This document shows, one piece after another, positions 3,425-64,000 of a stretch of DNA of 64,000 nt; position 1 is the first letter of the stretch; each line of letters opens with the position of its first letter. The notes under the pieces were generated by a model, which saw only the letters and a program-made list of their open reading frames with translations, was not told the origin of the DNA and ran no database searches. Made by a program: the position numbers and the translations under genes. This stretch comes from Octopus sinensis. Lineage: Eukaryota. The stretch spans positions 23,436,001 to 23,500,000 of the forward strand of contig NC_043009.1 of NCBI RefSeq assembly GCF_006345805.1. Reading direction: 5' to 3'.

Positions 3425-3880
3425 CCCAACAATCATACCGTGGTCCCAACAGCCATACCACAGTCCTGACAGCCATACTATACAGACCCCAAATTGCCAT
3501 CACAATCCCAACAGTCATACCACAGTCCAAAAATCCTAACCATAGTCCCAAAGACCTTACCACAATCCCAACAACCATACCATAGTCCCAACAGCCAGAC
3601 CACAGTCCCAACAGCCAGACCATAGTCCCAACAGCCAGACCACAGTCCCAACAGCCAGACCATAGTCCCAACAGCCAGACCACAGTCCCAACAGCCAGAC
3701 CATAGTCCCAACAGCCAGACCACAGTCCCAACAGCCAGACCATAGTCCCAACAGCCAGACCACAGTCCCAACAGCCAGACCATAGTCCCAACAGCCAGAC
3801 CACAGTCCCAACAGCCAGACCACAATCCTAAAAACCTTACCACAATCCCAACAGCCATACTGGAGTCCCAACAACCTTAC
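3425..3880. repeat. 20-bp minisatellite CCA(C/T)AGTCCCAACAGCCAGA with alternating 40-bp higher-order unit
   Basis: Near-perfect alternation at ~3580-3822; degenerate units at 3100-3190, 3425-3580, 3822-3880 and 4170-4300. Confidence 0.95.
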
Positions 3881-18600: not shown

Positions 18601-20141
18601 TACCAAAGTGAGTGCCAACTGCTTCTAACTACGATGCTGTCACATCAAAACAATCGACCCCACCCCCCATCGATACTGCCGCTGCCACCGCCACCACAGT
18701 TGGTCAGTGGAAATGGATATGTCTTACAGAAGGAATCAATTTCCAAACTGCTGCAGCAACAGGGGAATACTGCACGGGTGTATGGGGTGGGAGATGTGGA
18801 AAGTTGGTGGAGGAGGGTGGGGTGGGGGCAGAGCACCGGTTGGGGGAAGGAAGGGGAGAGTAAATGGCTCAAACTGTGTGAGATTATTGTTGCTTTTGTT
18901 TAGCACATCCCCCACCATCCACTTTGATAGAGGAGACTTATGATTAAAACTGCTCCAGATATGGCCATTCCAAATGGTATTTAAATTGTAGCTGTACTTT
19001 GAGTGACATTATCTAATGAATGTGTCCATTGCCTTGCTACATTTTGTGAGGTTTAAAAGTGATTTGGCTGCTATTTCTAACAAGTCAGATGACCACATAA
19101 AGGCTTTGTGTTGCATGACCTTGTTGTTTAGCCCCAGGTCAGCCCTCAAAGAGACCTATGATCTCAGGTTTCCAAGTCATAACCACTTCATGACAGTTTT
19201 TCTATTTTTTTTCTTTTGGCAAACTGCATATAACGGCCATACTGGAGCACTGCCTTGTTGGGTTTTGTCAAATAAATCATATCCAAAATCTATTTAAGCT
19301 CTTGACGACTGGTGTTGGTTTGTTTACATCTCTGTAACAGCAGTTTGGCAAAAAGAAGAGATAGAACAAGTGTTCTATCTCTTCTTTATGCCAAACTGCT
19401 GTTACAGAGGTGTAAACAAAACAACACCAGTTGTCAAGCAGCATGGGAACAAATACAAAAACATGCACACATGAGGCTTCCACACAGTTTCCATCAAACA
19501 GATCCACTCACAAGGCTTTGGTCAACCCAGGGCTACAGTGGAAGGCACTTGCACAAGGTGCATACAGTAAAACTGAACCAGGAACCCTATCATTACAAAG
19601 TAAGCTTCTTAATTATGCCATCATACTTTGACTTCTCTCTCTTTTTTTAACAACATAAGGTGTGGCTTGAAGCAATTTGGCTGCTGTTTCTAGCAGGCTG
19701 AAAACCACAAAGATGTTCCTTTGCTACATGACTTTGCTGTAACAGTAGTTCCAATCACGTAGTTCTGTAACAGATTGGTTCCAATCAAGCAGGCGTAGGA
19801 TCAAGACACCATTCTGTTTCATTATTCAGACATAGTGCATCTAGGACTACATTATCCAATGTGTAATTACATCTGCCTGTATGTGTACCTACCTGAGCAG
19901 ACTTGTGTGTTTGCATGTCTATGAGTGTGCCTATCTATGTGTATGTGTGTGTGTGCATGTATGTGAAAATGTTTGTATATTTACATATGAATGCATGCGT
20001 ACAGATGTGTGTGAGAAAATGTTTGTGTATGTATGTATGCAAAAAGGTTTGAGTATATGTATATAGATGTACACATGTATGTTTGAATATGCTCGTCTGC
20101 ATGTGTCTGGCTGTCTATATATATATGCATGTCTGTATGTG

Positions 20142-20552
20142 TAGGAGTGGCTGTGTGGTAAGTAGCTTGCTTACCAACCACATGGTTCCGGGTTCAGTCC
20201 CACTGCGTGGCATCTTGAGCAAGTGTCTTTTACTATAGTCTCGGGCTGACCAAAGCCTTGTGAGTGGATTTGGTACACAGAAACTGAAAGAAGCCTGTCG
20301 TATATACCTATATCTATATATAAATATATGTGTGTGTATACGTTTGTGTGTCTGTATTTGTCCCCTGAACATCGCTTGACAACCGATGCTGCTGTGTTTA
20401 CGTCCCCGTAACTTAGTGGTTCGGCAAAAGAGACCAATAGAATAAGTACTAGGTTTACAAAGAATAAGTCCTGGGGTCAATTTGCTCAACTAAAGGCAGT
20501 GCTCCAGCATGGCCACAGTCAAATGACTGAAACAAGTAAAAGAGTGAAAGAG
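20142..20552 (+). mobile_element. SINE family A
   Basis: TGGCTGTGTGG (A box) ... GGTTCAGTCCC (B box) ... (TAAAAGAG)n-like tail. Confidence 0.9.
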
Positions 20553-37420: not shown

Positions 37421-38142
37421 TTGGGTTGTCCGGAAAGTTTGTGCCGATTTTTAAAGGAAAAAAAAGGTCAATAAATTCAACTCAATTCAATTTTTATTGG
37501 CTCAAAAAGCAAAAGCAAGGCCAAGTAGGGGGACAGGGAGTTATGTACAGGGAGGGTGGTCATACAAAGAGTTCAGGCCATTTCTGGTCAAGAGAGACTT
37601 TGAACCGAGTGGTTGTCGGCATCTTCACTATCTCGTCCAGCCATTACATTTTTAATCAACCAAATATGAACTGTTTTGTTGCACAATGCATCTCCATCTT
37701 TCCTTTAACTTGAAAATACCCTCTTCCCAGAATTGAGATGGTTTCATGGCAAATAATTCATCAAGGTATCTTTTTATGTCATCCAAGGAACTCAAATTTT
37801 TACCATTAAGACTATTCTGCAGAGACCTGAATAAGTGGAAATCCGAAGGAGCAATATCTAGTGAATATGGAGAGCGGGGTAACACATCCCAGCAAAAGCT
37901 GCAGCAATTTTTGTCTGGTTCCCAAAGCATCAAGTGCCGAAAAGGAACTTTCTTATCCATTTTAAAGGGTTACAGAATTAACACAGGTTTTAGGAATATA
38001 AACCTTCTTCCATGAAAACATAGCTTAAACTGTGTTCTAAATGGAGGTGTAGTCAAATCCTATTTTATGGACTCAACCATGTTCTAAAATAAGCCGAAAG
38101 GTAAGCTACTATAAATCGGCACAAACTTTCTGGACAACCCAA
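37421..38142 (-). mobile_element. Internally deleted mariner (same derivative as 25924-26490) with nested CR1 fragment
   Basis: Same TIRs with TA flanks; identical deletion junction TTGGGAACCAGACAAAAA. Confidence 0.9.
37477..37640 (-). mobile_element. CR1-type LINE 3' end fragment
   Basis: Minus strand WLDEIVKMPTTTRFKVSLDQKWPELFV* resembles the CR1 C-terminus (W..L..EVV.A.S...FK..LD..W); AATTG-like tail; absent from the sister mariner copy. Confidence 0.6.
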
Positions 38143-48082: not shown

Positions 48083-50325
48083 CAAATCAAATCAAAACAA
48101 ATCAAAATAGATGAACATCAATGGAATTTGTATCCTTGTGGTACCAGTGCCAGTGCCAGTGGCACACAAGAATCCATCCGAACGTGGCCGTAGTCAGTAC
48201 CGCTTGTGGTACCAGTGCCGGTGGCACACAAGAATCCATCCGAACGTGGCCGTAGTCAGTACCGCATCACTGGCCATCGTGCTGTGGGCACATAACAAAC
48301 ACCATCCGGTCGTGGCCGTTCGCCAGCCTCATCTAGCACCTGTGTCGGTGGGACATAAAAAGTAGTCAGTACCGCTTGTGGTACCAGTGCCGGTGGCACA
48401 CAAGAATCCATCCGAACATGGCCGTAGTCAGTACCGCATCACTGGCCATCGTGCTGTGGGCACATAACAAACACCATCCGGTCGTGGCCGTTCGCCAGCC
48501 TCATCTAGCACCTGTGTCGGTGGCACATAAAAACACCTTCCGAAGACCCGGCAAGACTAGTCAGGCCATAAACCATGGCCCCTACCTGGGACGTAGTCAG
48601 TCCACCTGTGCATACCTTCCTCCTTGTGATACTTGTGAAGGCCTGTTGAGGCAAGTGAAAATCAAAGGCCTGTTGAGGCAAGTGAAAATCAAAATCAAAA
48701 TCAAATCAAAACAAATCAAAATAGATGAACATCAATGGAATTTGTATCTTGTGGTACCAGTGCCGGTGGCACACAAGAAAACCATCCGAAAGTGGCCGTA
48801 GCCAGTACCGCATCGACTGGCCTCCGTTCTGTGGGCACATGACAAACACCATCCGATCGTGGCCGTTCGCCAGCCTCATCTAGCACCTGTGTCGGTGGCA
48901 CATAAAAACACCATCCGAAGACCCGGCAAGACTAGTCAGGCCATAACCCATGGCCCCTACCTGGGACGTAGTCAGTCCACCTGTGCATACCTTCCTTCTT
49001 GTGACACTTGTGAAGACCTGTTGAGGCAAGTGAAAATCAAATCAAAACAAATCAAAATAGATGAACATCAATGGAATCTGTATCTTTGTGGTACCAGTGC
49101 CGGTGGCACACACTTTGTGGTACCAGTGCCGGTGGCACACATGAGAACCATCCGAACGTGGCCGTAGCCAGTTCCGCATCGACCGGCCTCCGTGCTGTGG
49201 GCACGTAACAAACACCATCCGATCATGGCCGTTCGCCAGCCTCATCTGGCACCTGTGTCGGTGGCACATAAAACACCTTCCGAAGACCCGGCAAGACTAG
49301 TCAGTCCACCTGTGCATACCTTCCTTCCTTCTTGTGACACTTGTGAAGACCGGTTGAGGCAAGTGAAAATCAAATCAAATCAAATCAAAATAGACAAAAT
49401 AGATGAACATCAATGGAATTTGTATCTTGTGGTACCAGTGCCTGTGGCACACAAGAAATCCATCAGTGCCGTAGTCAGTGCGGTGGGCACATGACAAACA
49501 CCATCCGATCGTGGCTGTTCGCCAGCCTCATCTAGCACCTGTGTCGGTGGCACATAAAAACACCATCCGAAGACCTGGCAAGACTAGTCAGGCCATAACC
49601 CATGGCCCCTACCTGGGACGTAGTCAGTCCACCTGTGCATACCTTCCTTCTTGTGACACTTGTGAAGACCTGTTGAGGCAAGTGAAAATCAAATCAAACA
49701 AATCAAAATAGATGAACATCAATGGAATTTGTATCTTTGTGGTACCAGTGCCGGTGGCACGTGGCACATAAGAAAACCATCCGAACGTGGCCGTAGCCAG
49801 TACCGCATCGACTGGCCTCCGTGCTGTGGGCACGTAACAAGCACCATCCGATCGTGGCCGTTTGCCAGCCTCATCTGGCACCTGTGTCGGTGGCACATAA
49901 AAACACCATCCGAGCGTGGCCGTCTGCCAGCCTCGTCTGGCACCTGTGTCGGTGGCACATAAAAACACCATCCGAGCGTGGCCGTCTGCCAGCCTCGTCT
50001 GGCACCTGTGTCGGTGGCACATAAAAACACCATCCGAGCGTGGCCGTCTGCCAGCCTCGTCTGGCACCTGTGTCGGTGGCACATAAAAACACCATCCGAG
50101 CGTGGCCGTTTGTCAGCCTCGTCTGGCACCTGTGTCGGTGGCACATAAAATCACCCACTACACTCTCGGAGTGGTTGGCGTTAGGAAGGGCATCCAGCTG
50201 TAGAAACACTGCCAGATCTGACTGGACTGGTGCAGCTTTCGGGCTCCCCAGACCCCAGTTGAACCGTCCAACCCATGCTAGCATGGAAAGCGGACGTTAA
50301 ATGATGATGATGATGATGATGATGA
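48078..50325 (+). repeat. Higher-order tandem array of RTE 3' UTR sequence, ending in an intact RTE tail
   Basis: ATAGATGAACATC starts at ~48107, 48721, 49057, 49399, 49708; 60-bp subrepeats at ~49870-50150; tail at 50150-50325. Confidence 0.9.
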
Positions 50326-50344
50326 TATATATAAGTATGTATAC

Positions 50345-50381
<37 letters not shown>

Positions 50382-50448
50382 AGTATGTATACATATATAT
50401 ATATATATATATATAAGTATGTATACATATTATATATATATATATAAG

Positions 50449-50488
<40 letters not shown>

Positions 50489-50599
50489 TATGTATTATAT
50501 ATATATATATATATATATATAGAAGTATATATATATATATATATATATATATAAGTATGTATATATATAATAATATATATATAAGTATATATATATAAG

Positions 50600-50649
<50 letters not shown>

Positions 50650-50724
50650 AGTATGTATATATATATATATATATATATAAGTATATATATATAAGTATGT
50701 ATATATATATATATATATAAGTAT

Positions 50725-50774
<50 letters not shown>

Positions 50775-50823
50775 ATGTATATATATTATATATATATAAA
50801 GTATATATATATATAAGTTGTAT

Positions 50824-50854
<31 letters not shown>

Positions 50855-50954
50855 ATATAAGTATGTATATATATATATAATATATATATATATATAATAT
50901 ATATATATATAATATATATATCTCTATATTATAAATATATATATATATATACAT

Positions 50955-53045
50955 ATCAACATATGCACAAAAAAAAACAAAACCAAACTTCAGCAAAAAA
51001 GAATGGGCTGAGTTGAACAAATTAAAACTATATAAAACAATAACAATCAAAGAGGCGATAAAGGGAGTGCTGTTGTCTTAATGGATACGACATTTTACAT
51101 AACTTTGGTACTTTCTATGCTGGAAGACACAACATACTATGAAAAGGCACAAACTACAGTCAACAAAAAATAATGAGGGAACTAAAATCCATATTAAACC
51201 CATACAAAGCAGGGCTAACCGACAAAGATATTTATACCAATTTCACAAGTAAAAACTAGCCAATTCTACGGTATACCTAAGATCCACAAAAGTGAAAAAA
51301 TAAGCAACGCATGCAAGATAGCTACAGACAAATAATTAAAGTCCCTAATCCTAATGACCTCAAATTGAGACCCATAATAGCAGGTCCCGCATGCGAAACC
51401 CACCGCCTCAGTAACTTTTTAGACACCCTGTTTAAAACCACTCCTCAACATGTCAAAAGCTATATAAGGGACGACTTAGATATGCTCAATCACCTACCGA
51501 ATACTATAAACAAAAAACACCATACTGGTATCCTTCGATGTAGTCAACCTCTACTCCAATATCCCCCACAACCTAGGACTAGAGGCAATCCAATTCTGGC
51601 TAGAGAATCACGCCAACGAACTACCACACCGCATCAAAAAAGAATTTGTGATAGAAGGGTTAAATTCATCCTGGAAAATACTTCTTCGCCTTCAATGACA
51701 ACTTCTACCGACAAAAATCGGGGACTGCGATGGGTACACAATGGCCCCCTCCTTTGCCAACCTAGTCATAGGATACCTAGAGATTAGTCTGTATCGTAAG
51801 GTTCTAGAAAGATATGGCAGCCCTTTCTCCATCTACACAGAAACAACTGGAAGAGATATCTAGATGACTGTTTCATCCTTTGGCATAAAATATAGAAAAA
51901 CTCATAGAATTCCAGAAAATTTTGAACGGACTGGACGTAAACATCCAATTCACGATGGAATAGCCAACAACAACTCCCCTTCCTCGATATCCTCATTAAG
52001 AAAGCTAATAATATAATAGAAACAGACATATACTATAAGCCTACAGACTCTAAGCAATATCTTCCTTCAATTCATGCCACCCAGACACACCAGGATGAAT
52101 ATCCCCTTCAATCTAGCAAAAAGGATATGCACTATAGTCTCTAACGCAAACACCAGAGACACACGACTACAAGAACTAAAGATACCCTAATCACCAGGAA
52201 CTATCCACCTTCACTTATTGACAAATGCATTCAACGTGCCCTTCAACTTAACATCAAGGAACTGAGACATCCCAAATCAAAGAAAAACTTACAACCAAAA
52301 GCCTTACCATACATCTCCACACACAACCCTCTCAATAACGAAGCCTTCGACACCATCCTCCACAACATACCCCTCCTAAAAAAAAGACCACAGAATGAAC
52401 ACAATCCTCCAAACACACACGATCATAAAAAGCAAAAGACAGCCTAGATCCATGAAAAGTCTCCTTACACAAGCCCGAATTCACTCTTCAACACAGAAGC
52501 CGACAGTAAAAAATGTGGAAGACCCAATTGCGGGATATGCGACTATCTAATCGAGGGTTCTGAGTTCTCCTTCAAACAGGGACAACGTTTTACAGTGAAA
52601 AGCAACTTCACATGTGCTTCGGAGAACCTAATATACTCACAAACCTGCTCCGGTGTCAAGAGCAGTACATAGGCCAAACAAAAATGGTTTGCGTAAACGA
52701 ATGGCCCTGCACAGATCCCAGATAAAAATTCCACAAACAGAAAAATAGCTTTAGCCAACACATAGATACTTGCGCCAACAAAAAAACACCAAACTTCAGA
52801 ATTTTCCCCCTCTACCAATTTAGGGACGATACAACCTCAAGACAACGAATAAGTAAAGAAAATCTCTTTATTACAAAATACAAGCCACTTCTTACGGTCT
52901 ACGACAAACAATTAATATACCTCAACTTTAGAATAAAGAAAAAAAATATATATACACACACAAATACTACACTCCATAGAATCCATTACTATCAGCCCCT
53001 TCATAGCTATATTTACACCATTTCATATTCTCCTTCTCTGTTTTT

Positions 53046-53078
<33 letters not shown>

Positions 53079-53674
53079 ATCATCATCGTTATCATCATCA
53101 TCGGCATCATCATCATCGCCACCATCATCACCACCATCTTCTCCTTCTTCTTCATCATCATCGTTTCATCATCATCTCGTCGTCATAATCATCACCACCA
53201 TCACCATCATCGTCATCTTCTCTTCTCCTTCTTCTCTCCCCCCTACCCCTTAAGTTTGTCACTAATGTTTTTTAGTATAACACCTACGCTAATTCTATAA
53301 ACAACAAGCCTGTCATATAAATATTCTCCTGAATTGAACTGAGACTGCCAGCCGCCACTGACCATTCAAAATACAACCATCAGGGCACTCCCAGATTCTC
53401 CCACCCCCCTTTCCTCACCAGCCTTCCCTCTACTACCCTACCAAGAACTCACAACTACCTCGAACACACAAGTGCAAACAAGGGAGTCAGAGAAAGGCAG
53501 AATGCCACTTAAATCTGAACACTACTATAGAAATTTCTTTTAAAAAAACTTTTCTTCTAATTTTCTAATTTAATTATTTAATCATTACAGTTGAAAAGGT
53601 CTCAAAATGACCGAAACCGGTACTGAAATGTTCACTATAAAATTATTTTAGCATTTTCTATTTTTTACTTGTTT

Positions 53675-53679
<5 letters not shown>
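50955..53679 (+). mobile_element. Penelope-like element (RT + GIY-YIG endonuclease; Neptune-like), frameshifted
   Basis: ADKG-like motif (~51050), LRPIIAG, FDVVNLY (~51535), GTAMG (~51720), RYLDD (51854-51868), LPFLD, YYKPTD, CGRPNCGIC linker (52514-52540), NLIY..QYIGQT (52625-52680). Confidence 0.92.
53583..53630 (+). ncRNA. Minimal type I hammerhead ribozyme, U3-A8 variant, at PLE 3' end
   Basis: CATTACAG-TTGAAAA-GGTC(TCAAAAT)GACC-GAAA-CCGG-TA-CTGAAATG; stem I 7 of 8 paired; palindromic stem III ACCGGT. Confidence 0.7.
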
Positions 53680-53755
<76 letters not shown>

Positions 53756-53756
<1 letters not shown>

Positions 53757-53964
53757 CCATGTTGATTCGTTAGCTACTGCACGCAATTTTTTTTCTCTCC
53801 TTCTTTCTGTGTTTTTCTCTCTCTGTGTATCTTTCTGTTGAGAGCGTAGGCTCGAAACGTTAAAGACTTGTTTTATTTATATTTCCTGAGCGCCATACTA
53901 ATACAATTGTTCGTTTGTTTTCCACCTGCCTCGTCGCTTTTGTTTATTTTCATAAAGCTTCCCG

Positions 53965-53965
<1 letters not shown>
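53756..53965 (+). mobile_element. Short non-coding element between (TA)n tracts with a hammerhead-like fold (probable PLE terminal-repeat derivative)
   Basis: TCTTT-CTGTTGA-GAGC(GTAG)GCTC-GAAA-CG-TT-AAAGA at 53830-53866. Confidence 0.5.
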
Positions 53966-54008
<43 letters not shown>

Positions 54009-54299
54009 TATATACTTGTTCGAAGGTTATATGGATACAGTTTGTGTATCAAATAGCTAACTTAAGGCGATGGCCTCATGGAGCTAATAAGCGGACAGCT
54101 TTTTTCTTATTTTTATAAGAATGCCATATTAGTATGGCGATAACTATTATTTCCGGGAACGCTGCCGCTGTTCTCTTTTAGAGAGACTTAGTTATTTTAA
54201 TATTTCTATTATTGAAAACAAGTGGATGTATTCCACCGAACTAGGTAAATAAAACCATCGAACAGAGATTGTCGGAAGCGACACCTACTGGCTGGCTAC

Positions 54300-54341
54300 G
54301 CTGCATTGAAAAGGGGCAATACTCCGAAACGCGTCTGTAGC
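54300..54341 (+). ncRNA. Minimal hammerhead ribozyme (U3-A8 variant), copy 1
   Basis: GCTGCA-TTGAAAA-GGGG(CAATA)CTCC-GAAA-CGCG-TC-TGTAGC; predicted cleavage 3' of C54335. Confidence 0.75.
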
Positions 54342-54658
54342 TGCCGTCAAGTAGTGTGGAGCGACTGACCTCCCTTGTTCGAAGGTTATATGGATACAGT
54401 TTGTGTATCAAATAGCTAATTTAAGGCGATGGCCTCATGGAGCTAATAAGCGGACAGCTTTTTTCTTATTTTTATAAGATGCCATATTAGTATGGCGATA
54501 ACTATTATTTTCCGGGAACGCTGCCGCTGTTCTCTTTTAGAGAGACTTAGTTATTTAATATTTCTATTATTGAAAACAAGTGGATGTATTCCACCGAAAC
54601 TAGGTAAATAAAACCATCGAACAGAGATTGTCGGAAGCGACACCTACTGGCTGGCTAC

Positions 54659-54700
54659 GCTGCATTGAAAAGGGGCAATACTCCGAAACGCGTCTGTAGC
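54659..54700 (+). ncRNA. Minimal hammerhead ribozyme (U3-A8 variant), copy 2
   Basis: Identical to copy 1; predicted cleavage 3' of C54694, 359 nt downstream. Confidence 0.75.
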
Positions 54701-54945
54701 TGCCGGTCAAGTAGTGTGGTGCGACTGACCTCCCTTGTTCGAAGGTTATATGGATACAGTTTTGTGTATCAATAGCTAACTTAAGGCGATGGCCTCATGG
54801 AGCTAATAAGCGGACAGCTTTTTCTTATTTTTATAAGAATGCCATATTAGTATGGCGATAACTATTATTTATATTATATATATAGATATAATATATATAT
54901 ATATAGGTATTATATATATATATATATATATATTATGTATGTATG

Positions 54946-54985
<40 letters not shown>

Positions 54986-55025
54986 GTATGTATATAGATA
55001 TATATATATAATATGTATGTATGAT

Positions 55026-55056
<31 letters not shown>

Positions 55057-55163
55057 TATATAATATATATATATTATGTATGTATATATATATATATATA
55101 TAATATATATATATATATGTATGTATGTATATATATTATATATATATGGATATATAGGTATTG

Positions 55164-55194
<31 letters not shown>

Positions 55195-55210
55195 GTATGT
55201 ATGTATATAT

Positions 55211-55262
<52 letters not shown>

Positions 55263-55365
55263 ATATTATATTATGTATGATATATAATGTATATATATAT
55301 GTATATATATAATGTATGTATGTATATATATATATATATATAAATATATATATATGTATGTAATG

Positions 55366-55396
<31 letters not shown>

Positions 55397-55410
55397 ATAT
55401 ATATATATAT

Positions 55411-55655
55411 ATGTCGATTCCTTCTTCCACTTCCAGGAAATCTACGCTCCCAGCTTAGTGTTTCTAATGCTCGTTGCTTAGTTTTTCTTGGAGGGCTGGC
55501 CGTGATCTAGTAATCTCAAGATTAATCAGCCGAAATTACTCGATGATCCGGTTCTTGACTGAAGACTGAGGGTTTCGAATGTCCTGTCCGTGTTTTATCG
55601 TATCGTCTTCTAAGAGTTATACGTTCTTGTCCATTTTTGTATTTTTCTACATACC

Positions 55656-58627: not shown

Positions 58628-61557
58628 CTAGCATTAAAGACCCGTCGTTGCCGGGTCATAGTGCTAGTGCATGTATATATGTGTATATATATGTGTACAT
58701 ATTACATGTACACATAAAATGCAAAATACAAAGTTATATCTTGATATCGCTAGTGATAATAATACTCAAAATATATAACAGACTGGAATTGTTTTATTAT
58801 TATCCACAAGGGGCGAACATAGAGGGAACAATACAATCTGATGTGGGGTCAGATACACGAATGGGGTTACACAAAGATGAGTTTTAAAAATTCAAAAAAA
58901 TACAAATATAAAAATCGAATGAAGAACAGACCGGAAGACATTACGGATAGAGTGGGAGCGGGTTTAGCTCGGACCCCCATGAGCCCCGCTTCCCCACTGA
59001 TACTTTGGTTTCGTCTAGTTTTACATTTATGTGGTATCATCCACTCACAACTTTCGTGATACATCCTTCCATCGTTCTTCATACACTCTCTTAGTCAGGC
59101 ATTTTCTCTCCAGCCCTATCTTCCTTTTTAGGTGAAAGATGAAGTAATTCATCAATCCAGGGCCGGAGATGAACTTGCCTGACCGTAAACCTTTCATCCT
59201 AGTCTTCCAAATCACCTCTTGCGCAATTGCTACTACAATGAGAAAACAATTCTTACCTTCTTTCGCAAGGAAATCTGGTGGGTCAATTTTTATAATAGAC
59301 TCAGTCGACAGCTGTACTCTTCGTGTGCTTGACAACAGCTGTTCGGCATAAACCCTCACCTGTGACACGACCGAACAATGGACAATAGCGTGCGGGATGG
59401 TTTCCCTATCCCGCTTGCATCTTGGACATATCGGACTGTCTTGGCCACCGTTCCTTGCGAGTTTATCCCGAACAGGTAGAGCTCCTCTGTAACATTGCCA
59501 TGCCAGAGACTTCTGGAAGTTGTCCAGGGTCTTCAGCCCGAACGTACGTCAGAACAGACTGGCCAGCTGATTATCGTCGAGACCTAGGGCTTCCCCTAAG
59601 GTATCTTCACATTCCGTCTCTACCAACCCTCTATAGAAGAATGTGGTGGAACCCCCACCGCAGGCGTTGCCTGAGCGACGGAATAGCAGGAGAGCCTTGC
59701 GACACTCCGTGTACCATGTGCCCAGTTTCGATCTACGATTCAGCCAGGTTTCCCATCCACCGAAACTAGTGAACTTGGGAAACCTCAGTTTTGCTAGCGG
59801 AGACCACACCCGTTCACCATCCATGTAGAGCCACAGATATCTTAACCTCAGCGCATGTCTGCGCATCATCAGCCAAGGCATCCCTAGCCCACCCTTTAAC
59901 GGTTGTTGACAGCAAGTAGAGCGCTTTCACAGAGGGTTTCTCGCCCCTTCCACAAGAAGTAGAAGAGCTGTCTTTCCAACTTGTTCAACCACGAATCAGG
60001 GCAAGGAACGACGGAAAGGCGGTAGGTGATAACCGATGCGATAAACACATTGGCTACTTCCGCCCTTCCTTTCAGGGATAGCCACTGCCAAGACCAGGTC
60101 TTGGCTACTGCAGCCAACCTGCTCGATACCTTACCCCAGTTCTTCTCTATTTGGAGGTCTGGTCCGAACCAAACCCCTAGCAACTTAATCGGACCCTCCG
60201 TCCAACATCCCACGACGCTGTCAGGAGGCATCGACTTGCCTCTCCTGGTGCCGAGTTGCAAGCCGACTGACTTTTCACGATTAACCTTTGCTCCTGTCAC
60301 CGTCTCGTAAACCTCTATGGCCTTGCCTACCCTCTGTAGGTGATCCATTTCGGTTACGATGATGGTGATGTCATCCGCGTAAGCTGACACCGATTTTCCA
60401 CAACCTGGCTGTCTCGGAATGCCACTCAGTTTTCGCAGTAATGGCTCAAGAGCCACCATGTACAAAAGCGGGGAGAGCGGACACCCTTGACAAACCGAGC
60501 GCTTGATGTTGAACGACCTCGAAAAGAAGCCGTTCACCCGGAAAACTGTGCCAGGGCAGGACACCAGGTAGCGATGGTCGACCCTATCGAATGCTTTAGA
60601 TTGGTCTAAATGACCAGTGCCCCACCTTGCAGAATCACTATTTAAACCCCTCTATAGTGTGTACCGCATAAGATGGAGATTATCCTGAATAGATCTGCCA
60701 GGAACGCACATGTTCTGTGCCTCCCCGATCAGACCATTCGCGACACACGCCCAATCTTTTCGATAAACATTTGGCCAAAATCTTCAACTCTGTGTTTAGC
60801 AGAGTGATGGGTCTGAAATTATCAATACACCCCTTGCTCGGGTCCTTTCTGACAAGTGTCACTACTCCCCGGCGCACAGATCTGGGTAGGACCCGTTCTG
60901 CTGCCAGTTCGCATAGACCTCTGCCATTAGGGCCCGAACAAGTCTGGCATACTCTTAATAAACTAAGGGGTAGCCCATCCAAACCCGGCGCCTTGCCCGT
61001 GCCGCAAGTCCGCCATCGTCTCAACCACCTCCCAGGCGTGATTGGCCCTTCACAGCCCATATAACAGACTGGAATTGTTAGCACTTCGTTTTCTCTACAT
61101 TGTATACTTATAGATAATAATCTTTCTTTAATCTAATTTTTATATCAATCTGGACTATTCCATTTTGCACGCTAATTTTATTTTAATTTATTCCCATTCA
61201 TGTGAAACCACTTCTTCAAGTTCAAGTCATTGATACATTTTATACAAATTGCTATTTTTCACTTTTGTTATGTTATGATTATATATACTTTATTTGATTT
61301 TAATTATTACTTACTACATATAATTCAATGTTATTATTATTTTATTGTTAAAGTGAAAGCATCTGACATAAAATAGAGAGAAATAGTTGTTTCACTTTAA
61401 CACGTAATACTGAAATAGTGGAGAAGATATGATATTGCTATGGGCTCGCTCTAGGCAAGTAGGGCATATGTAAAATTTGAATGAAATTGGTTGTGTAGTT
61501 CTCAAGTTTTAGGGAGAGACAGACAGACACACATTCTCAGTTTTATATATATAAAGA
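58628..61557 (-). mobile_element. Non-autonomous Helitron-type element (interrupted by L1/Tx1)
   Basis: A|TC 5' end at 61557; 3' hairpin GACCCG/CGGGTC (58639-58657) followed by CTAG|T at 58628; homolog at 12556-13085. Confidence 0.8.
58794..61058 (-). mobile_element. 5'-truncated L1/Tx1-clade LINE with 21-bp TSD
   Basis: KAPGLDGLP, FRPITLLNTELKILAK, LDQSKAFDRVDH, QGCPLSPLL, YADD (60370-60381), CPRC..H..C knuckle (~59380-59430); ATATAACAGACTGGAATTGTT at 58773-58793 and 61059-61079. Confidence 0.92.
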
Positions 61558-62730: not shown

Positions 62731-64000
62731 CACAGACATGCAGGAAATAAATAGACACCTTTAATTTTCAAAATCTTTTATTTAATATGCAAAGCAAACA
62801 ATTGAAATGTAGTCGATAGGTAGGACTACATACTTTAGTATTTAGTTGACATTCCCTTTGCAGTTTTTAATTCAGAAACTCTTTTTGGCAATTAACTGAT
62901 GAGCTTTGCGATTGTCTCTTGTGGAATTTCTGCCCACTTTTCACACAACAATTGAAACAATTCATCTTTAGATTTAGGTTTCTGTCGAGTTTTTCGTATA
63001 GCTCTCTATCTAGTATGCTCCAAAGATTTTCAATTGGGTTCATGTCAGGGGATTTGCTCGACCAAGGAAGCTTTATGATCCCATTTTCAGTCAGCCATTG
63101 TTGATTCCTTTTCGCTGTGTAGCACGGAGCCCTATCTTCCACGATGAATAAAAACTAATTTTTCGTTATATTATCCTGTGAATACATCAGACACAGTCCT
63201 TGCTTAAGTATTCTGATGTATTTTTCAGAGTTTATGGTTCCAACACATTCGATCAGCTCAGAACGACTATTACTGGTGACAGCCACTCATACCATTACAG
63301 AGATACCACCATGTTTCACAATTGGTTGAGTCGTTTCAAATCTAATTCTTGATTGGGAAGCCTCCAGACCCAAACACGTCCACTGTCTGAAAATAATGCA
63401 AATCTGGATTCATCTGAGACACTCACTCTATCCCAAAATGAACTGGATTTTTCTGACATCTCCTTAGCCCATTTCTTTCTTTTCCTGATATTAATTAGTT
63501 GAAGGAGAGGTTTTCTTCTAGCTGTTCGTCCATAATACTCAAGCTTATGCAGATATGTAACACACGTTCTTGGACTAACTTCTAGCTGTTTTGCAATGTC
63601 AGAAGCCTTTGAATAGGGTTTGTTTTCCACAATTCTCTTCTAACAGCGAAGCTTTCTTTCTGAGGGACTAGGTCGGCCGGGACGAGAATCTGTTGATTCT
63701 TTTCCTTGGCTTTTGAATTGCACTATAATTCTATTAACAGTAGCAAGAGGAATTTGAAGATTTTCAGCAATTTTTTGCTGGCTAAGGACCAGCCTCAGAT
63801 TGTCCAACAATACACCCTCTTTGAAAATCTGACAGTTCTACTGAATTTTTTGTGCGTGGCATGGTTACTCTTTGCAAATGTTTAATATAATGGCACCTGG
63901 AATGAAAACGAATAGTTACATTGTAAATTCTACACCGCTGAAAACATATTAAGACGCTTAGATCAGAAATTTTGAAAATTAAGGGTGTCTATTTACTTCC
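62731..64000 (-). mobile_element. Tc1-like transposon, decayed transposase; right TIR runs off the window
   Basis: WSSKSPDMNPIENLW and RTARRKPLL motifs; 62743-62774 matches the reverse complement of 63969-64000 at 30/32; TA at 62729-62730. Confidence 0.88.

What the first reader, a model, noticed from the sequence alone, without database searches (positions are those of the whole stretch)
54015..54870. Candidate cephalopod retrozyme: 359-nt non-coding tandem unit delimited by variant (U3-A8) hammerhead ribozymes
Seen: 2.4 near-identical ~359-bp units with no ORF, bounded by (TA)n on both sides. Each full unit folds into a type I hammerhead: 6-bp stem I GCUGCA/UGUAGC, core UUGAAAA, stem II GGGG/CUCC, GAAA, palindromic ACGCGU stem III and a GUC cleavage site. 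The unit also has perfect small hairpins (GCCATA-TTAG-TATGGC, GATAC..GTATC). Established: the hammerhead C3-G8 pair is Watson-Crick, so U3-A8 is a compensatory double change, not decay. Minimal hammerheads with palindromic stem III cleave as dimers. Animal non-LTR retrozymes are tandem hammerhead repeats of a few hundred nt that yield circular RNAs and are thought to borrow PLE machinery. Inference: a multimeric transcript self-cleaves at 54335 and 54694 to release a 359-nt monomer or circle. The array starts and ends out of register with the cleavage site, as expected from rolling-circle reverse transcription. I do not know whether this family has been described.
Basis: partly seen in the sequence, partly recalled or inferred. 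Interest (0 to 1): 0.95.

Follow-up and report, generated by a model that had tools for sequence, protein, structure and literature searches.

The report
Octopus hammerhead-ribozyme tandem repeat (retrozyme)
A 359-bp non-coding repeat in an octopus genome carries a self-cleaving hammerhead ribozyme motif in each unit and looks like a small parasitic 'retrozyme' that borrows a neighbouring Penelope-like retrotransposon; it is a new cephalopod example of an element type already known in other animals, not a new kind of element.

Summary
Window 54015-54870 holds 2.4 tandem copies of a 359-bp non-coding unit inside a (TA)n tract. Each full unit has a type I hammerhead (HHR) at 54300-54341 and 54659-54700.

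The motif is not chance. My descriptor found no hit in 11.8 Mb of random sequence. A covariance model built only from four experimentally validated retrozyme HHRs (coral, mussel, two axolotl) finds both copies at 32.8 bits, E about 2e-7.

Diverged homologues of the unit exist in Octopus bimaculoides and O. vulgaris. Two carry the HHR. Helices I and II and the core 3-8 pair (U-A here, C-G there) change in a compensatory way.

The released 359-nt RNA is predicted to be highly self-paired (z = -6.3). Two motifs cofold into the classical double hammerhead.

A decayed Penelope-like element (RT plus C-terminal GIY-YIG) lies about 340 bp upstream in the same (TA)n tract. It carries a second, non-homologous HHR with the same UUGAAAA core near its 3' end.

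However, U3-A8 hammerheads and metazoan (including molluscan) retrozymes are already published. Cleavage, circular RNA and mobilisation remain untested. I rate it a new member of a known kind, of moderate interest.

The parts
54015..54870 (+). Tandem array of 2.4 units of a 359-bp non-coding repeat (retrozyme-like), 40% GC
   Evidence: TRF period 359, 2.4 copies, 97% matches; unit alignment; no long ORFs; GC content
54300..54341 (+). Type I hammerhead, copy 1: helix I GCUGCA/UGUAGC, core UUGAAAA (U3-A8), helix II GGGG/CUCC with loop CAAUA, GAAA, palindromic helix III ACGCGU, C17 at 54335 (predicted cleavage 54335|54336)
   Evidence: Descriptor scan; model R1 built from validated retrozyme HHRs, 32.8 bits, E = 1.9e-7
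54659..54700 (+). Type I hammerhead, copy 2, identical in sequence; C17 at 54694 (predicted cleavage 54694|54695)
54336..54694 (+). Predicted 359-nt monomer released by cleavage at both hammerheads. Its 5' end pairs with its 3' end, extending helix I into a long, branched, rod-like fold
   Evidence: MFE -117.5 kcal/mol against -87.0 +/- 4.9 for shuffles, z = -6.28; helices I and II are kept in the MFE structure
53966..54014 (.). (TA)n microsatellite, 5' flank of the array (insertion target)
54866..55412 (.). (TA)n microsatellite, 3' flank of the array
50957..53678 (+). Decayed, 5'-truncated Penelope-like element. [quoted passage not shown] It is bounded by (AT)n at 50325-50956 and 53679-53754
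   Evidence: Frame translations; about 750-aa homologues carrying RVT_1 and GIY-YIG; tblastn covers residues about 106-752 of 753
53584..53629 (+). Second, non-homologous hammerhead-like motif about 50 nt from the PLE 3' end: AUUACAG UUGAAAA GGUC-UCAAAAU-GACC GAAA CCGG UA CUGAAAU. It has the same U3-A8 core and a palindromic ACCGGU helix III
   Evidence: R1 hit, 15.1 bits, E = 0.047; homologous motif with UUGAAAA in an O. bimaculoides PLE 3' UTR, L008 11970-12008

Best explanation
The array is a short multimer of an octopus non-LTR retrozyme: a non-coding, non-autonomous retroelement with one type I hammerhead per 359-bp unit.

Proposed mechanism:
1. Transcription reads through the array.
2. 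Two neighbouring hammerheads pair through the palindromic ACGCGU helix III to form a double hammerhead. They cleave after C17 (54335 and 54694).
3. This releases a 359-nt RNA with 5'-OH and 2',3'-cyclic phosphate ends. The extended helix I rod holds those ends together.
4. A host RtcB-type ligase, or the ribozyme itself, circularises the RNA.
5. A Penelope-like element (PLE) reverse transcriptase copies the circle by rolling circle, and the PLE GIY-YIG nuclease inserts the multimeric cDNA into (TA)n microsatellites.

Shown here: the motif, its conservation and covariation across homologous copies, the fold, the tandem layout, the (TA)n insertion site, and the neighbouring PLE with the same core variant.

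Inferred: cleavage activity of the U3-A8 core, circularisation, and mobilisation by the PLE.
For: Motif and statistics
- The tandem repeat is confirmed.
- The HHR descriptor hits only these two sites in the window and none in 11.8 Mb of random sequence.
- Model R1 was built only from coral, mussel and axolotl retrozyme HHRs that cleave in vitro (sequences from the PMC7229834 supplement; model). It scores both copies at 32.8 bits, E = 1.9e-7.

Family and covariation
- Homologous family copies are L005 19934-20261 (71% identity, HHR core CUGAGGA), L001 14425-14154 (HHR core CCGACGA) and a truncated copy at L007 11673-11525.
- Among the three HHR-bearing copies, 4 of the 6 helix I pairs, the 10.1-11.1 pair and the 3-8 pair change on both sides while staying paired.
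- On nine aligned HHRs, 96% of cells are paired, 14 of 16 pairs have double changes, no shuffle in 500 reaches the observed values, and slid controls pair at about 35%.

Fold
- The monomer fold has z = -6.3 and keeps the HHR helices.
- Cofolding two motifs gives the double hammerhead at -38.1 kcal/mol, against 2 x -16.0 for two separate monomers.

Retrozyme features
- The unit is 359 bp and 41% GC, with no coding capacity. This matches the published definition of 150-450 bp and under 45% GC (PMC7229834).

PLE context
- A PLE remnant lies about 340 bp upstream in the same (TA)n tract, and its own 3' UTR HHR has the UUGAAAA core.
- Related PLE copies also end in (TA)n.
- Family copies L001 and L007 also abut (TA)n.

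Literature
- U3-A8 occurs naturally in S. mansoni PLE HHRs (PMC4209133).
- Retrozymes co-occur with PLEs and are related to their terminal repeats (bioRxiv 10.64898/2026.07.22.740005).
Against: - No activity or expression data exist for this element.
- In a comprehensive double-mutant scan of a type III hammerhead, only the G3:C8 swap rescued activity. All other doubles in that core region were low (PMC9901934), so U3-A8 may be a weak ribozyme.
- PLE minimal HHRs cleave poorly in vitro (PMC4209133).
- Rfam hammerhead models give no hit, even at E <= 10 on 81 nt. They also miss the canonical-core homologue in L005, so this negative carries little weight.
- Only three HHR-bearing family copies were recovered. 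The two U3-A8 units are recent duplicates of one another, so U3-A8 within the retrozyme family rests on a single lineage.
- One relative (L001) has U4C and another (L005) has a non-palindromic helix III, which shows that many copies are decaying.
- No sequence similarity beyond the HHR was found between the unit and the neighbouring PLE.
Confidence: 0.75

Rival explanations
1. Dead relic. The array belongs to the retrozyme family, but its hammerhead is crippled by the U3-A8 change. On this reading the 2.4 copies arose by local DNA-level duplication (unequal exchange or slippage in a microsatellite-rich region), not by ribozyme processing and rolling-circle reverse transcription.
For: - U3-A8-type doubles had low activity in a saturation double-mutant scan of a type III HHR.
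- Other family copies are visibly decaying: U4C in L001, and a non-palindromic helix III in L005.
- The neighbouring PLE is full of frameshifts and stops, so no local autonomous partner is active.
- The region is rich in other tandem duplications.
Against: - All eleven other invariant core positions are intact, in a copy that is about 29% diverged from its nearest recovered relative.
- The two changes are exactly pair-preserving.
- The same UUGAAAA core occurs independently in two copies of an octopus PLE HHR and in S. mansoni PLEs. That argues the variant is tolerated.
- Array units are 97-98% identical, so the array is young relative to the family.
Confidence: 0.2
2. The repeat is not an independent element. 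It is the terminal pseudo-LTR or tail region of the adjacent Penelope-like element, duplicated as part of a complex PLE insertion.
For: - It lies on the same strand and in the same (TA)n tract, 340 bp downstream of the PLE 3' end.
- PLEs typically form partial tandems, with HHRs in their terminal repeats.
- The core heptamer is identical to that of the PLE's own HHR.
Against: - There is no sequence similarity between the unit and the PLE, or any of the fetched PLE relatives, beyond the HHR core.
- The PLE already has its own 3' UTR HHR and ends at a separate (AT)n.
- The homologues of the unit in L005 and L001 are about 10 kb and 4 kb from the nearest PLE remnant and not contiguous with one; the truncated L007 copy lies within about 0.4 kb of a PLE remnant's 3' end.
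Confidence: 0.04
3. The unit number or the tandem arrangement is an assembly artefact. Alternatively, the hammerhead resemblance is chance within an ordinary satellite.
For: - The differences between units are mostly homopolymer indels, which are typical of long-read error.
- One O. bimaculoides family copy abuts an assembly gap.
Against: - Chance is excluded by the random-sequence scan, the independent covariance model and covariation among homologues.
- The units also differ by true substitutions, and the array has clean (TA)n junctions on both sides.
- The unit number does not affect the identification.
Confidence: 0.01

Closest known systems
Metazoan non-LTR retrozymes (Cervera & de la Pena 2020, PMC7229834), especially the Mytilus galloprovincialis about 353-nt retrozyme
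   Same: - Short tandem repeat of a few hundred bp, under 45% GC and non-coding.
- One type I hammerhead per unit, with a 6-bp helix I, a 4-bp helix II and a minimal CG-rich palindromic helix III (mussel GAAACGCGCGUC, octopus GAAACGCGUC).
- Highly self-paired monomer.
- Co-resident PLEs.
   Different: - The core is UUGAAAA (U3-A8) instead of CUGAUGA.
- There is no detectable sequence similarity to the mussel unit outside the ribozyme.
- The host is a cephalopod.
- Only a 2.4-mer is seen here, and expression and circularity are untested.
Penelope-like-element hammerheads, including the U3-A8 variant of S. mansoni Cercyon PLEs (Cervera & de la Pena 2014, PMC4209133)
   Same: - Natural U3-A8 covariation in the catalytic core.
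- Palindromic 15.2-16.2 region or loop 3, implying dimeric action.
- Association with PLE termini; the PLE in this window carries such a motif at 53584-53629.
   Different: - The tandem-array hammerhead has the canonical architecture (6-bp helix I, 4-bp helix II, and no bulged base between positions 9 and 10.1), not the min-HHR layout.
- It sits in a small non-coding repeat, not in a PLE terminal repeat.
Amphibian satellite 2 and axolotl retrozyme hammerheads that act as dimers (Forster et al. 1988; PMC7229834)
   Same: Helix III is too short for monomeric cleavage, and a double hammerhead forms between tandem copies. The double hammerhead is the cofold MFE here.
   Different: The sequences are unrelated, and the amphibian motifs keep C3-G8.

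Membership tests
Hammerhead ribozyme, type I | Conserved core U4 G5 A6 A9 / G12 A13 A14 / A15.1-U16.1 / H17 | tested here: met
   All are present in both copies: UUGAAAA ... GAAA ... UC.
Hammerhead ribozyme, type I | C3 and G8 (canonical identities of the core Watson-Crick pair) | tested here: not met
   The positions are U3 and A8. The pair is preserved and the identities are not. The homologues in L005 and L001 have C3-G8. U3-A8 is a published natural variant (PMC4209133).
Hammerhead ribozyme, type I | Three helices around the core, supported by covariation, with helix I open | tested here: met
   There are compensatory changes in helices I and II and at the 3-8 pair among three homologous octopus copies. 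Across nine HHRs, 96% of cells are paired, 14 of 16 pairs show double changes, and no shuffle in 500 reaches the observed values. The alignment was built by hand to the structure, so it leans towards that structure.
Hammerhead ribozyme, type I | Detection by a curated or independent covariance model | tested here: inconclusive
   Rfam 15 gives no hammerhead hit at the gathering threshold or at E <= 10, but it also misses the canonical-core homologue. A model built from four validated retrozyme HHRs detects both copies at 32.8 bits, E = 1.9e-7.
Hammerhead ribozyme, type I | Site-specific self-cleavage 3' of H17 | not testable with these tools
   This needs in vitro transcription and kinetics.
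Non-LTR retrozyme | Tandem repeats of about 150-450 bp, each with a type I HHR | tested here: met
   Units are 359 bp in 2.4 copies, with an HHR in each full unit.
Non-LTR retrozyme | Low GC (under 45%) and no coding capacity | tested here: met
   GC is 41%. The longest stop-to-stop frame is 64 aa, with no protein homologue.
Non-LTR retrozyme | Monomer RNA highly self-paired, with the HHR closing the rod | tested here: met
   The fold has z = -6.28, and the monomer's 5' and 3' ends pair through an extended helix I.
Non-LTR retrozyme | Multicopy family in the genome; co-occurrence with PLEs | tested here: met
   Three further diverged copies were found in about 145 kb of other octopod-like DNA, of which about 103 kb is identified as Octopus. 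A PLE remnant lies in the window, and PLE remnants occur in several fetched loci, including all five identified Octopus loci. Total copy number could not be measured.
Non-LTR retrozyme | Expression as linear and circular RNAs of unit length | not testable with these tools
   No transcriptome search was available. The ORF-based search of assembled public runs found nothing.
PLE pseudo-LTR (part of the PLE itself) | Sequence continuity or homology with PLE termini | tested here: not met
   There is no similarity beyond the HHR core to the adjacent PLE or to fetched PLE relatives.
SINE (LINE-mobilised) | Pol III promoter boxes and a poly(A) or LINE-like 3' tail | not tested
   Family copies end in or next to (TA)n, not poly(A). 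Promoter boxes were not searched for.

The most novel reading that the evidence does not exclude
The UUGAAAA (U3-A8, A7) core could be an active, lineage-specific hammerhead variant that arose independently in an octopus Penelope-like element and in its non-autonomous retrozyme. That would point to selection for a matched or deliberately attenuated ribozyme core. One possibility is slower cleavage that favours multimeric templates or ligation. Another is that the core acts as a partner-recognition feature for the PLE machinery.
Probability: 0.12. Interest if true: 0.6.

Novelty: new member of a known kind. Interest (0 to 1): 0.4.

Why it matters
The finding extends hammerhead-bearing retrozymes to cephalopods. 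It gives a compact natural test case for the hammerhead C3-G8 tertiary pair, because homologous octopus copies carry C-G while this array and a neighbouring PLE carry U-A.

The locus also places a retrozyme multimer and a PLE side by side in one (TA)n tract. That is circumstantial support for the current hypothesis that animal retrozymes are mobilised by PLE reverse transcriptase and its GIY-YIG nuclease.

On the practical side, such repeats can be abundant sources of small circular RNAs and can cause assembly gaps. One O. bimaculoides copy abuts a gap.

Tried and rejected
- **Rfam 15.** I ran it at the gathering threshold on the whole window and at E <= 10 on 1.1 kb and on 81 nt. There were no hammerhead hits. 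I rejected this as evidence against, because Rfam also misses the canonical-core homologue in L005. The mir-297 and mir-1277 hits are (TA)n artefacts.
- **ORF trick.** I searched a 437-aa composite of all stop-to-stop frames of the unit against 5.8 billion proteins, hoping to find other copies in assembled runs. Nothing scored.
- **Exact-pattern DNA scans.** Scans for the ribozyme in metagenome and viral contig collections gave 0 hits.
- **Unit as part of the neighbouring PLE.** blastn and nhmmer found no similarity outside the HHR.
- **Canonical-core descriptor on PLE relatives L002-L004.** Nothing was found. Their 3' UTR motif has a deviant core (AUGAAUA or AUGAAGA) and was only seen by eye. 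Its parse remains tentative.
- **Shuffle script.** My own dinucleotide-shuffle script hung, so I used strand folding's shuffles instead.
- **Literature.** Przybilski & Hammann 2007, on tolerance to 3-8 exchanges, is not held in the library. No paper combining retrozyme or hammerhead ribozyme with cephalopod terms was found.
- **MAFFT.** It misaligned HHRs with different loop lengths. I padded the loops with N to fix the register.

Full report
**1. Observation**

The repeat is real and sits at the stated coordinates. Tandem Repeats Finder gives 54015-54870 with period 359, 2.4 copies and 97% matches. The units align with a few substitutions and some 1-nt homopolymer indels; units 1 and 2 match at 354 of 363 columns. 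(TA)n lies on both sides, at 53966-54014 and 54866-55412. The longest stop-to-stop frame inside the array is 64 aa.

They read GCUGCA | UUGAAAA | GGGG-CAAUA-CUCC | GAAA | CGCG | UC | UGUAGC. C17 falls at 54335 and 54694, so a 359-nt monomer (54336-54694) would be released. Helices I and II each contain one G.U wobble.

**2. Is it more than chance?**

I wrote an RNAmotif-like descriptor with these requirements:
- core YUGANRA with a paired 3-8;
- G10.1-C11.1;
- helix II of at least 3 bp;
- GAAA;
- 0-8 nt before UH;
- helix I of at least 4 bp.

In the 64-kb window it hits only the two sites in the array. In 11.8 Mb of first-order Markov sequence of the same composition, scanned on both strands, it hits nothing.

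Rfam 15 gives no hammerhead match at gathering thresholds or at E <= 10, even on 81 nt. It also fails on a homologous octopus copy with a fully canonical core. I therefore treat the Rfam negative as insensitivity to these minimal-helix-III type I motifs.

As an independent test I took four retrozyme constructs from the supplement of Cervera & de la Pena 2020: coral Amil224, mussel Mg353, and axolotl Ax353 and Ax330 (PMC7229834). The paper reports in vitro self-cleavage for these, efficient for the coral HHR and needing dimers for the axolotl ones. I aligned their hammerheads and built covariance model R1 without any octopus sequence. R1 finds both array copies full-length at 32.8 bits, E = 1.9e-7 for the whole window, despite the U3 and A8 mismatches to the model.

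**3. Relatives elsewhere**

The window is octopus-like. The best protein hits of an RT fragment at 51311-51787 are from Octopus bimaculoides, O. sinensis and O. vulgaris. I fetched about 145 kb of other octopod-like genomic DNA around homologous RT fragments. About 103 kb of it (L001, L005-L008) is identified as Octopus.

R1 and nhmmer then revealed diverged homologues of the 359-bp unit:
- L005 (O. bimaculoides CM046618.1) 19934-20261, 71% identical over about 300 nt. Its hammerhead is at 19983-20027 and reads CUCAUA CUGAGGA UGGG-UAACCA-CCCA GAAA CCUAUG UC UGUGAG.
- L001 (O. bimaculoides CM046604.1) 14425-14154, minus strand. Its hammerhead is CGAACG CCGACGA AGGG-AAAUAA-CCCU GAAA UCCGGA UA CGUUCG. 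It abuts an assembly gap on one side and (TA)n on the other.
- L007 (O. vulgaris OX597815.1) 11673-11525, a fragment lacking the ribozyme and lying between TA-rich microsatellites.

Among the three ribozyme-bearing copies every helix I and helix II position stays paired although most positions differ. Four of the six helix I pairs change on both sides. The 10.1-11.1 pair reads G-C, U-A and A-U. The core 3-8 pair is U-A in the window and C-G in both relatives.

I also made a hand-registered alignment of nine hammerheads: three from the octopus family, two octopus or PLE 3' UTR motifs, and the four validated ones, with loops padded with N. On it, 96.2% of cells form standard pairs, 14 of 16 pairs have double-sided changes, and no shuffle in 500 reaches the observed values. 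Sliding the partners drops pairing to 32-43%. That alignment was fitted to the structure, so the within-family comparison is the stronger argument.

The hairpin GCCAUA-UUAG-UAUGGC is also conserved structurally in the relatives, as GCCACA...UGGC.

**4. Fold**

The predicted monomer 54336-54694 folds to -117.5 kcal/mol, against -87.0 +/- 4.9 for dinucleotide shuffles (z = -6.28, with 0 of 100 shuffles as stable). The minimum-free-energy structure keeps helices I and II. It extends helix I through a U/UAC internal loop into a long rod in which the monomer's 5' end pairs with its 3' end. That is the arrangement expected to hold the ends together for ligation.

A 53-nt segment alone does not form helix III. 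Two such segments cofold into the classical double hammerhead, with helix III ACGCGU x ACGCGU and helix I both in trans, at -38.1 kcal/mol against 2 x -16.0. This is consistent with dimer-dependent cleavage as described for newt, axolotl and PLE motifs (PMC4209133; PMC7229834).

**5. Context: a Penelope-like element in the same (TA)n tract**

Upstream on the same strand, 50957-53678 is a decayed, 5'-truncated PLE. Its remnants include:
- the RT motifs FYGIPKIHK, RPIIAG and YLDD;
- a CGRPNCGIC linker;
- a C-terminal GIY-YIG remnant (NLIY...YIGQT).

The remnants are spread over three reading frames and match residues about 106-752 of roughly 750-aa proteins that carry RVT_1 and GIY-YIG. The element is bounded by (AT)n at 50325-50956 and 53679-53754.

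R1's third-best hit in the window (15.1 bits, E = 0.047) lies about 50 nt from the PLE 3' end, at 53584-53629. It reads AUUACAG UUGAAAA GGUC-UCAAAAU-GACC GAAA CCGG UA CUGAAAU. It has the same U3-A8, A7 heptamer as the array, a 4-bp helix II and a palindromic ACCGGU, but no other similarity to the array unit.

An O. bimaculoides copy of this PLE has the homologous 3' UTR motif, again with UUGAAAA and with a decayed G12A (L008 11970-12008). Other relatives carry 3' UTR hammerheads with canonical cores: L009 CUGAAGA, L010 CUGAUGA with ACGCGU, and L007 CUGAUGA. Several relatives end in (TA)n.

So the PLE and the array sit as separate insertions in one long (TA)n tract. (TA)n is also where two of the three other family copies lie. 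This fits insertion by a microsatellite-biased PLE endonuclease; Craig et al. discuss such bias for Neptune and Naiad PLEs (PMC8557442).

**6. Interpretation**

The best-supported reading is a cephalopod member of the non-LTR retrozyme class. It is a non-coding, tandem, roughly 360-nt unit with a type I hammerhead that probably acts as a dimer. It would release a strongly self-paired monomer that can be circularised, then reverse-transcribed and inserted by PLE machinery.

What is shown:
- motif identity;
- statistical significance;
- conservation with covariation in homologous copies;
- fold;
- tandem layout;
- target-site context;
- a co-resident PLE with the same core variant.

What is inferred: cleavage by a U3-A8 core, circularisation, rolling-circle reverse transcription, and dependence on the PLE.

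The main doubt concerns activity. In a saturation double-mutant scan of a type III hammerhead, only the G3:C8 swap rescued the 3-8 pair (PMC9901934). PLE minimal hammerheads cleave poorly in vitro. Against simple decay:
- the two changes are exactly pair-preserving;
- all other invariant core positions are intact in a copy about 29% diverged from its nearest recovered relative;
- the same core recurs in an unrelated octopus PLE hammerhead and in S. mansoni PLEs.

I put about 0.85 on family membership and about 0.5 on the U3-A8 ribozyme being appreciably active in vivo.

**7. Comparison with known systems and novelty**

Metazoan retrozymes, including a 353-nt mussel element with a very similar GAAACGCGCGUC helix III, were described in 2020 (PMC7229834). 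U3-A8 covariation in PLE hammerheads was described in 2014, with about 1,300 hits in S. mansoni (PMC4209133). The PLE origin of animal retrozymes is argued in a 2026 preprint (10.64898/2026.07.22.740005).

I found no paper in the held library that describes hammerheads or retrozymes in cephalopods. Craig et al. mention only PLE remnants in cephalopods.

The finding is therefore a new member of a known kind. Its locally interesting features are a canonical-architecture hammerhead with U3-A8 in a retrozyme, C3-G8 homologues available for comparison, and an adjacent PLE sharing the variant.

**8. Limits**

- Only three ribozyme-bearing family copies could be recovered, because no eukaryotic genome or transcriptome DNA search was available.
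- Copy number, subfamily structure and expression are unknown.
- The source species of the window is not identified beyond Octopus-like.
- The parse of the deviant PLE 3' UTR cores in L002-L004 is tentative.

Noticed in passing
window 50957-53678 (+): A decayed, 5'-truncated Penelope-like element (RT, CxxC linker, C-terminal GIY-YIG). It is bounded by (AT)n on both sides, and an expanded (TTC)n/(TCA)n microsatellite sits in its 3' UTR at 53046-53220.
   Followed up: yes
window 53584-53629 (+); L008 11970-12008: A second hammerhead-like motif with the same UUGAAAA (U3-A8) core and a palindromic ACCGGU, near the PLE 3' end. A homologous motif occurs in an O. bimaculoides PLE copy, where G12 has decayed to A.
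   Followed up: yes
L002 3604-3649, L003 2666-2711, L004 4614-4661 (also 8479..., 12xxx repeats): PLE relatives from metagenome or ENA contigs share a conserved 3' UTR motif, CCAUGAA(U/G)A-hairpin-GAAACCGGU-GG. It reads as a hammerhead with A3-U8 (AUGAAUA), or with an inserted A after C3. This may be further natural variation at the 3-8 pair, but the parse is tentative.
   Followed up: partly
L004 2201-12263: The PLE is present as head-to-tail tandem copies with a period of about 3865 bp. Each copy has an upstream ORF of about 300-440 aa with no Pfam hit, followed by the RT-EN ORF.
   Followed up: no
L005 1020-1102 (-), L005 72-108 (-), L007 11178-11214 (+), L010 11767-11808 (+): More PLE-type minimal hammerheads with canonical cores (CUGAAGA or CUGAUGA) and palindromic helix III occur in the octopus or octopod-like loci. 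One has a very long helix II. Such motifs recur every few tens of kb in the sampled DNA.
   Followed up: partly
L001 14425-14700: The O. bimaculoides family copy directly abuts a run of N (an assembly gap). This is consistent with a collapsed or unresolved tandem array at that locus.
   Followed up: no
one search hit list (P0069, P0079, P0082, P0129): Full-length PLE RT plus GIY-YIG proteins are deposited as proteins of bacterial MAGs ('Candidatus Thiodiazotropha endolucinida' and 'Candidatus Thiodiazotropha taylori'). They probably come from host (clam) DNA binned into symbiont genomes.
   Followed up: no
window 59896-61084 (-): ORFs from a non-LTR (LINE-like) reverse transcriptase; the 222-aa ORF hits RVT_1 at E = 4e-14.
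   Followed up: partly
window 62867-63630 (-) and 37652-37960 (-): At 62867-63630, remnants of a Tc1/mariner-type transposase (HTH_Tnp_Tc3_2 and a weak DDE_3 hit). The 37652-37960 ORF resembles a transposase C-terminus by eye but had no Pfam hit.
   Followed up: partly
window 3443-3873, 48190-48533, 49761-50155: Other tandem repeats are present: a 20-bp minisatellite (21.5 copies), a 172-bp repeat (2 copies, 98% matches) and a 62-bp repeat (6.3 copies). The last two look related to a dispersed SINE-like sequence that recurs across the window.
   Followed up: no
window 53950-54030 and 54910-55000: The sub-threshold Rfam 'mir-297', 'mir-1277', 'mir-466' and similar matches are artefacts of (TA)n/(TG)n low-complexity hairpins.
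   Followed up: yes
window 53755-53965; L006 15749-15882: The 210-bp segment between the two (TA)n tracts, separating the PLE from the array, has a 71% match in an O. sinensis locus. It is therefore another dispersed repeat fragment of unknown type.
   Followed up: no
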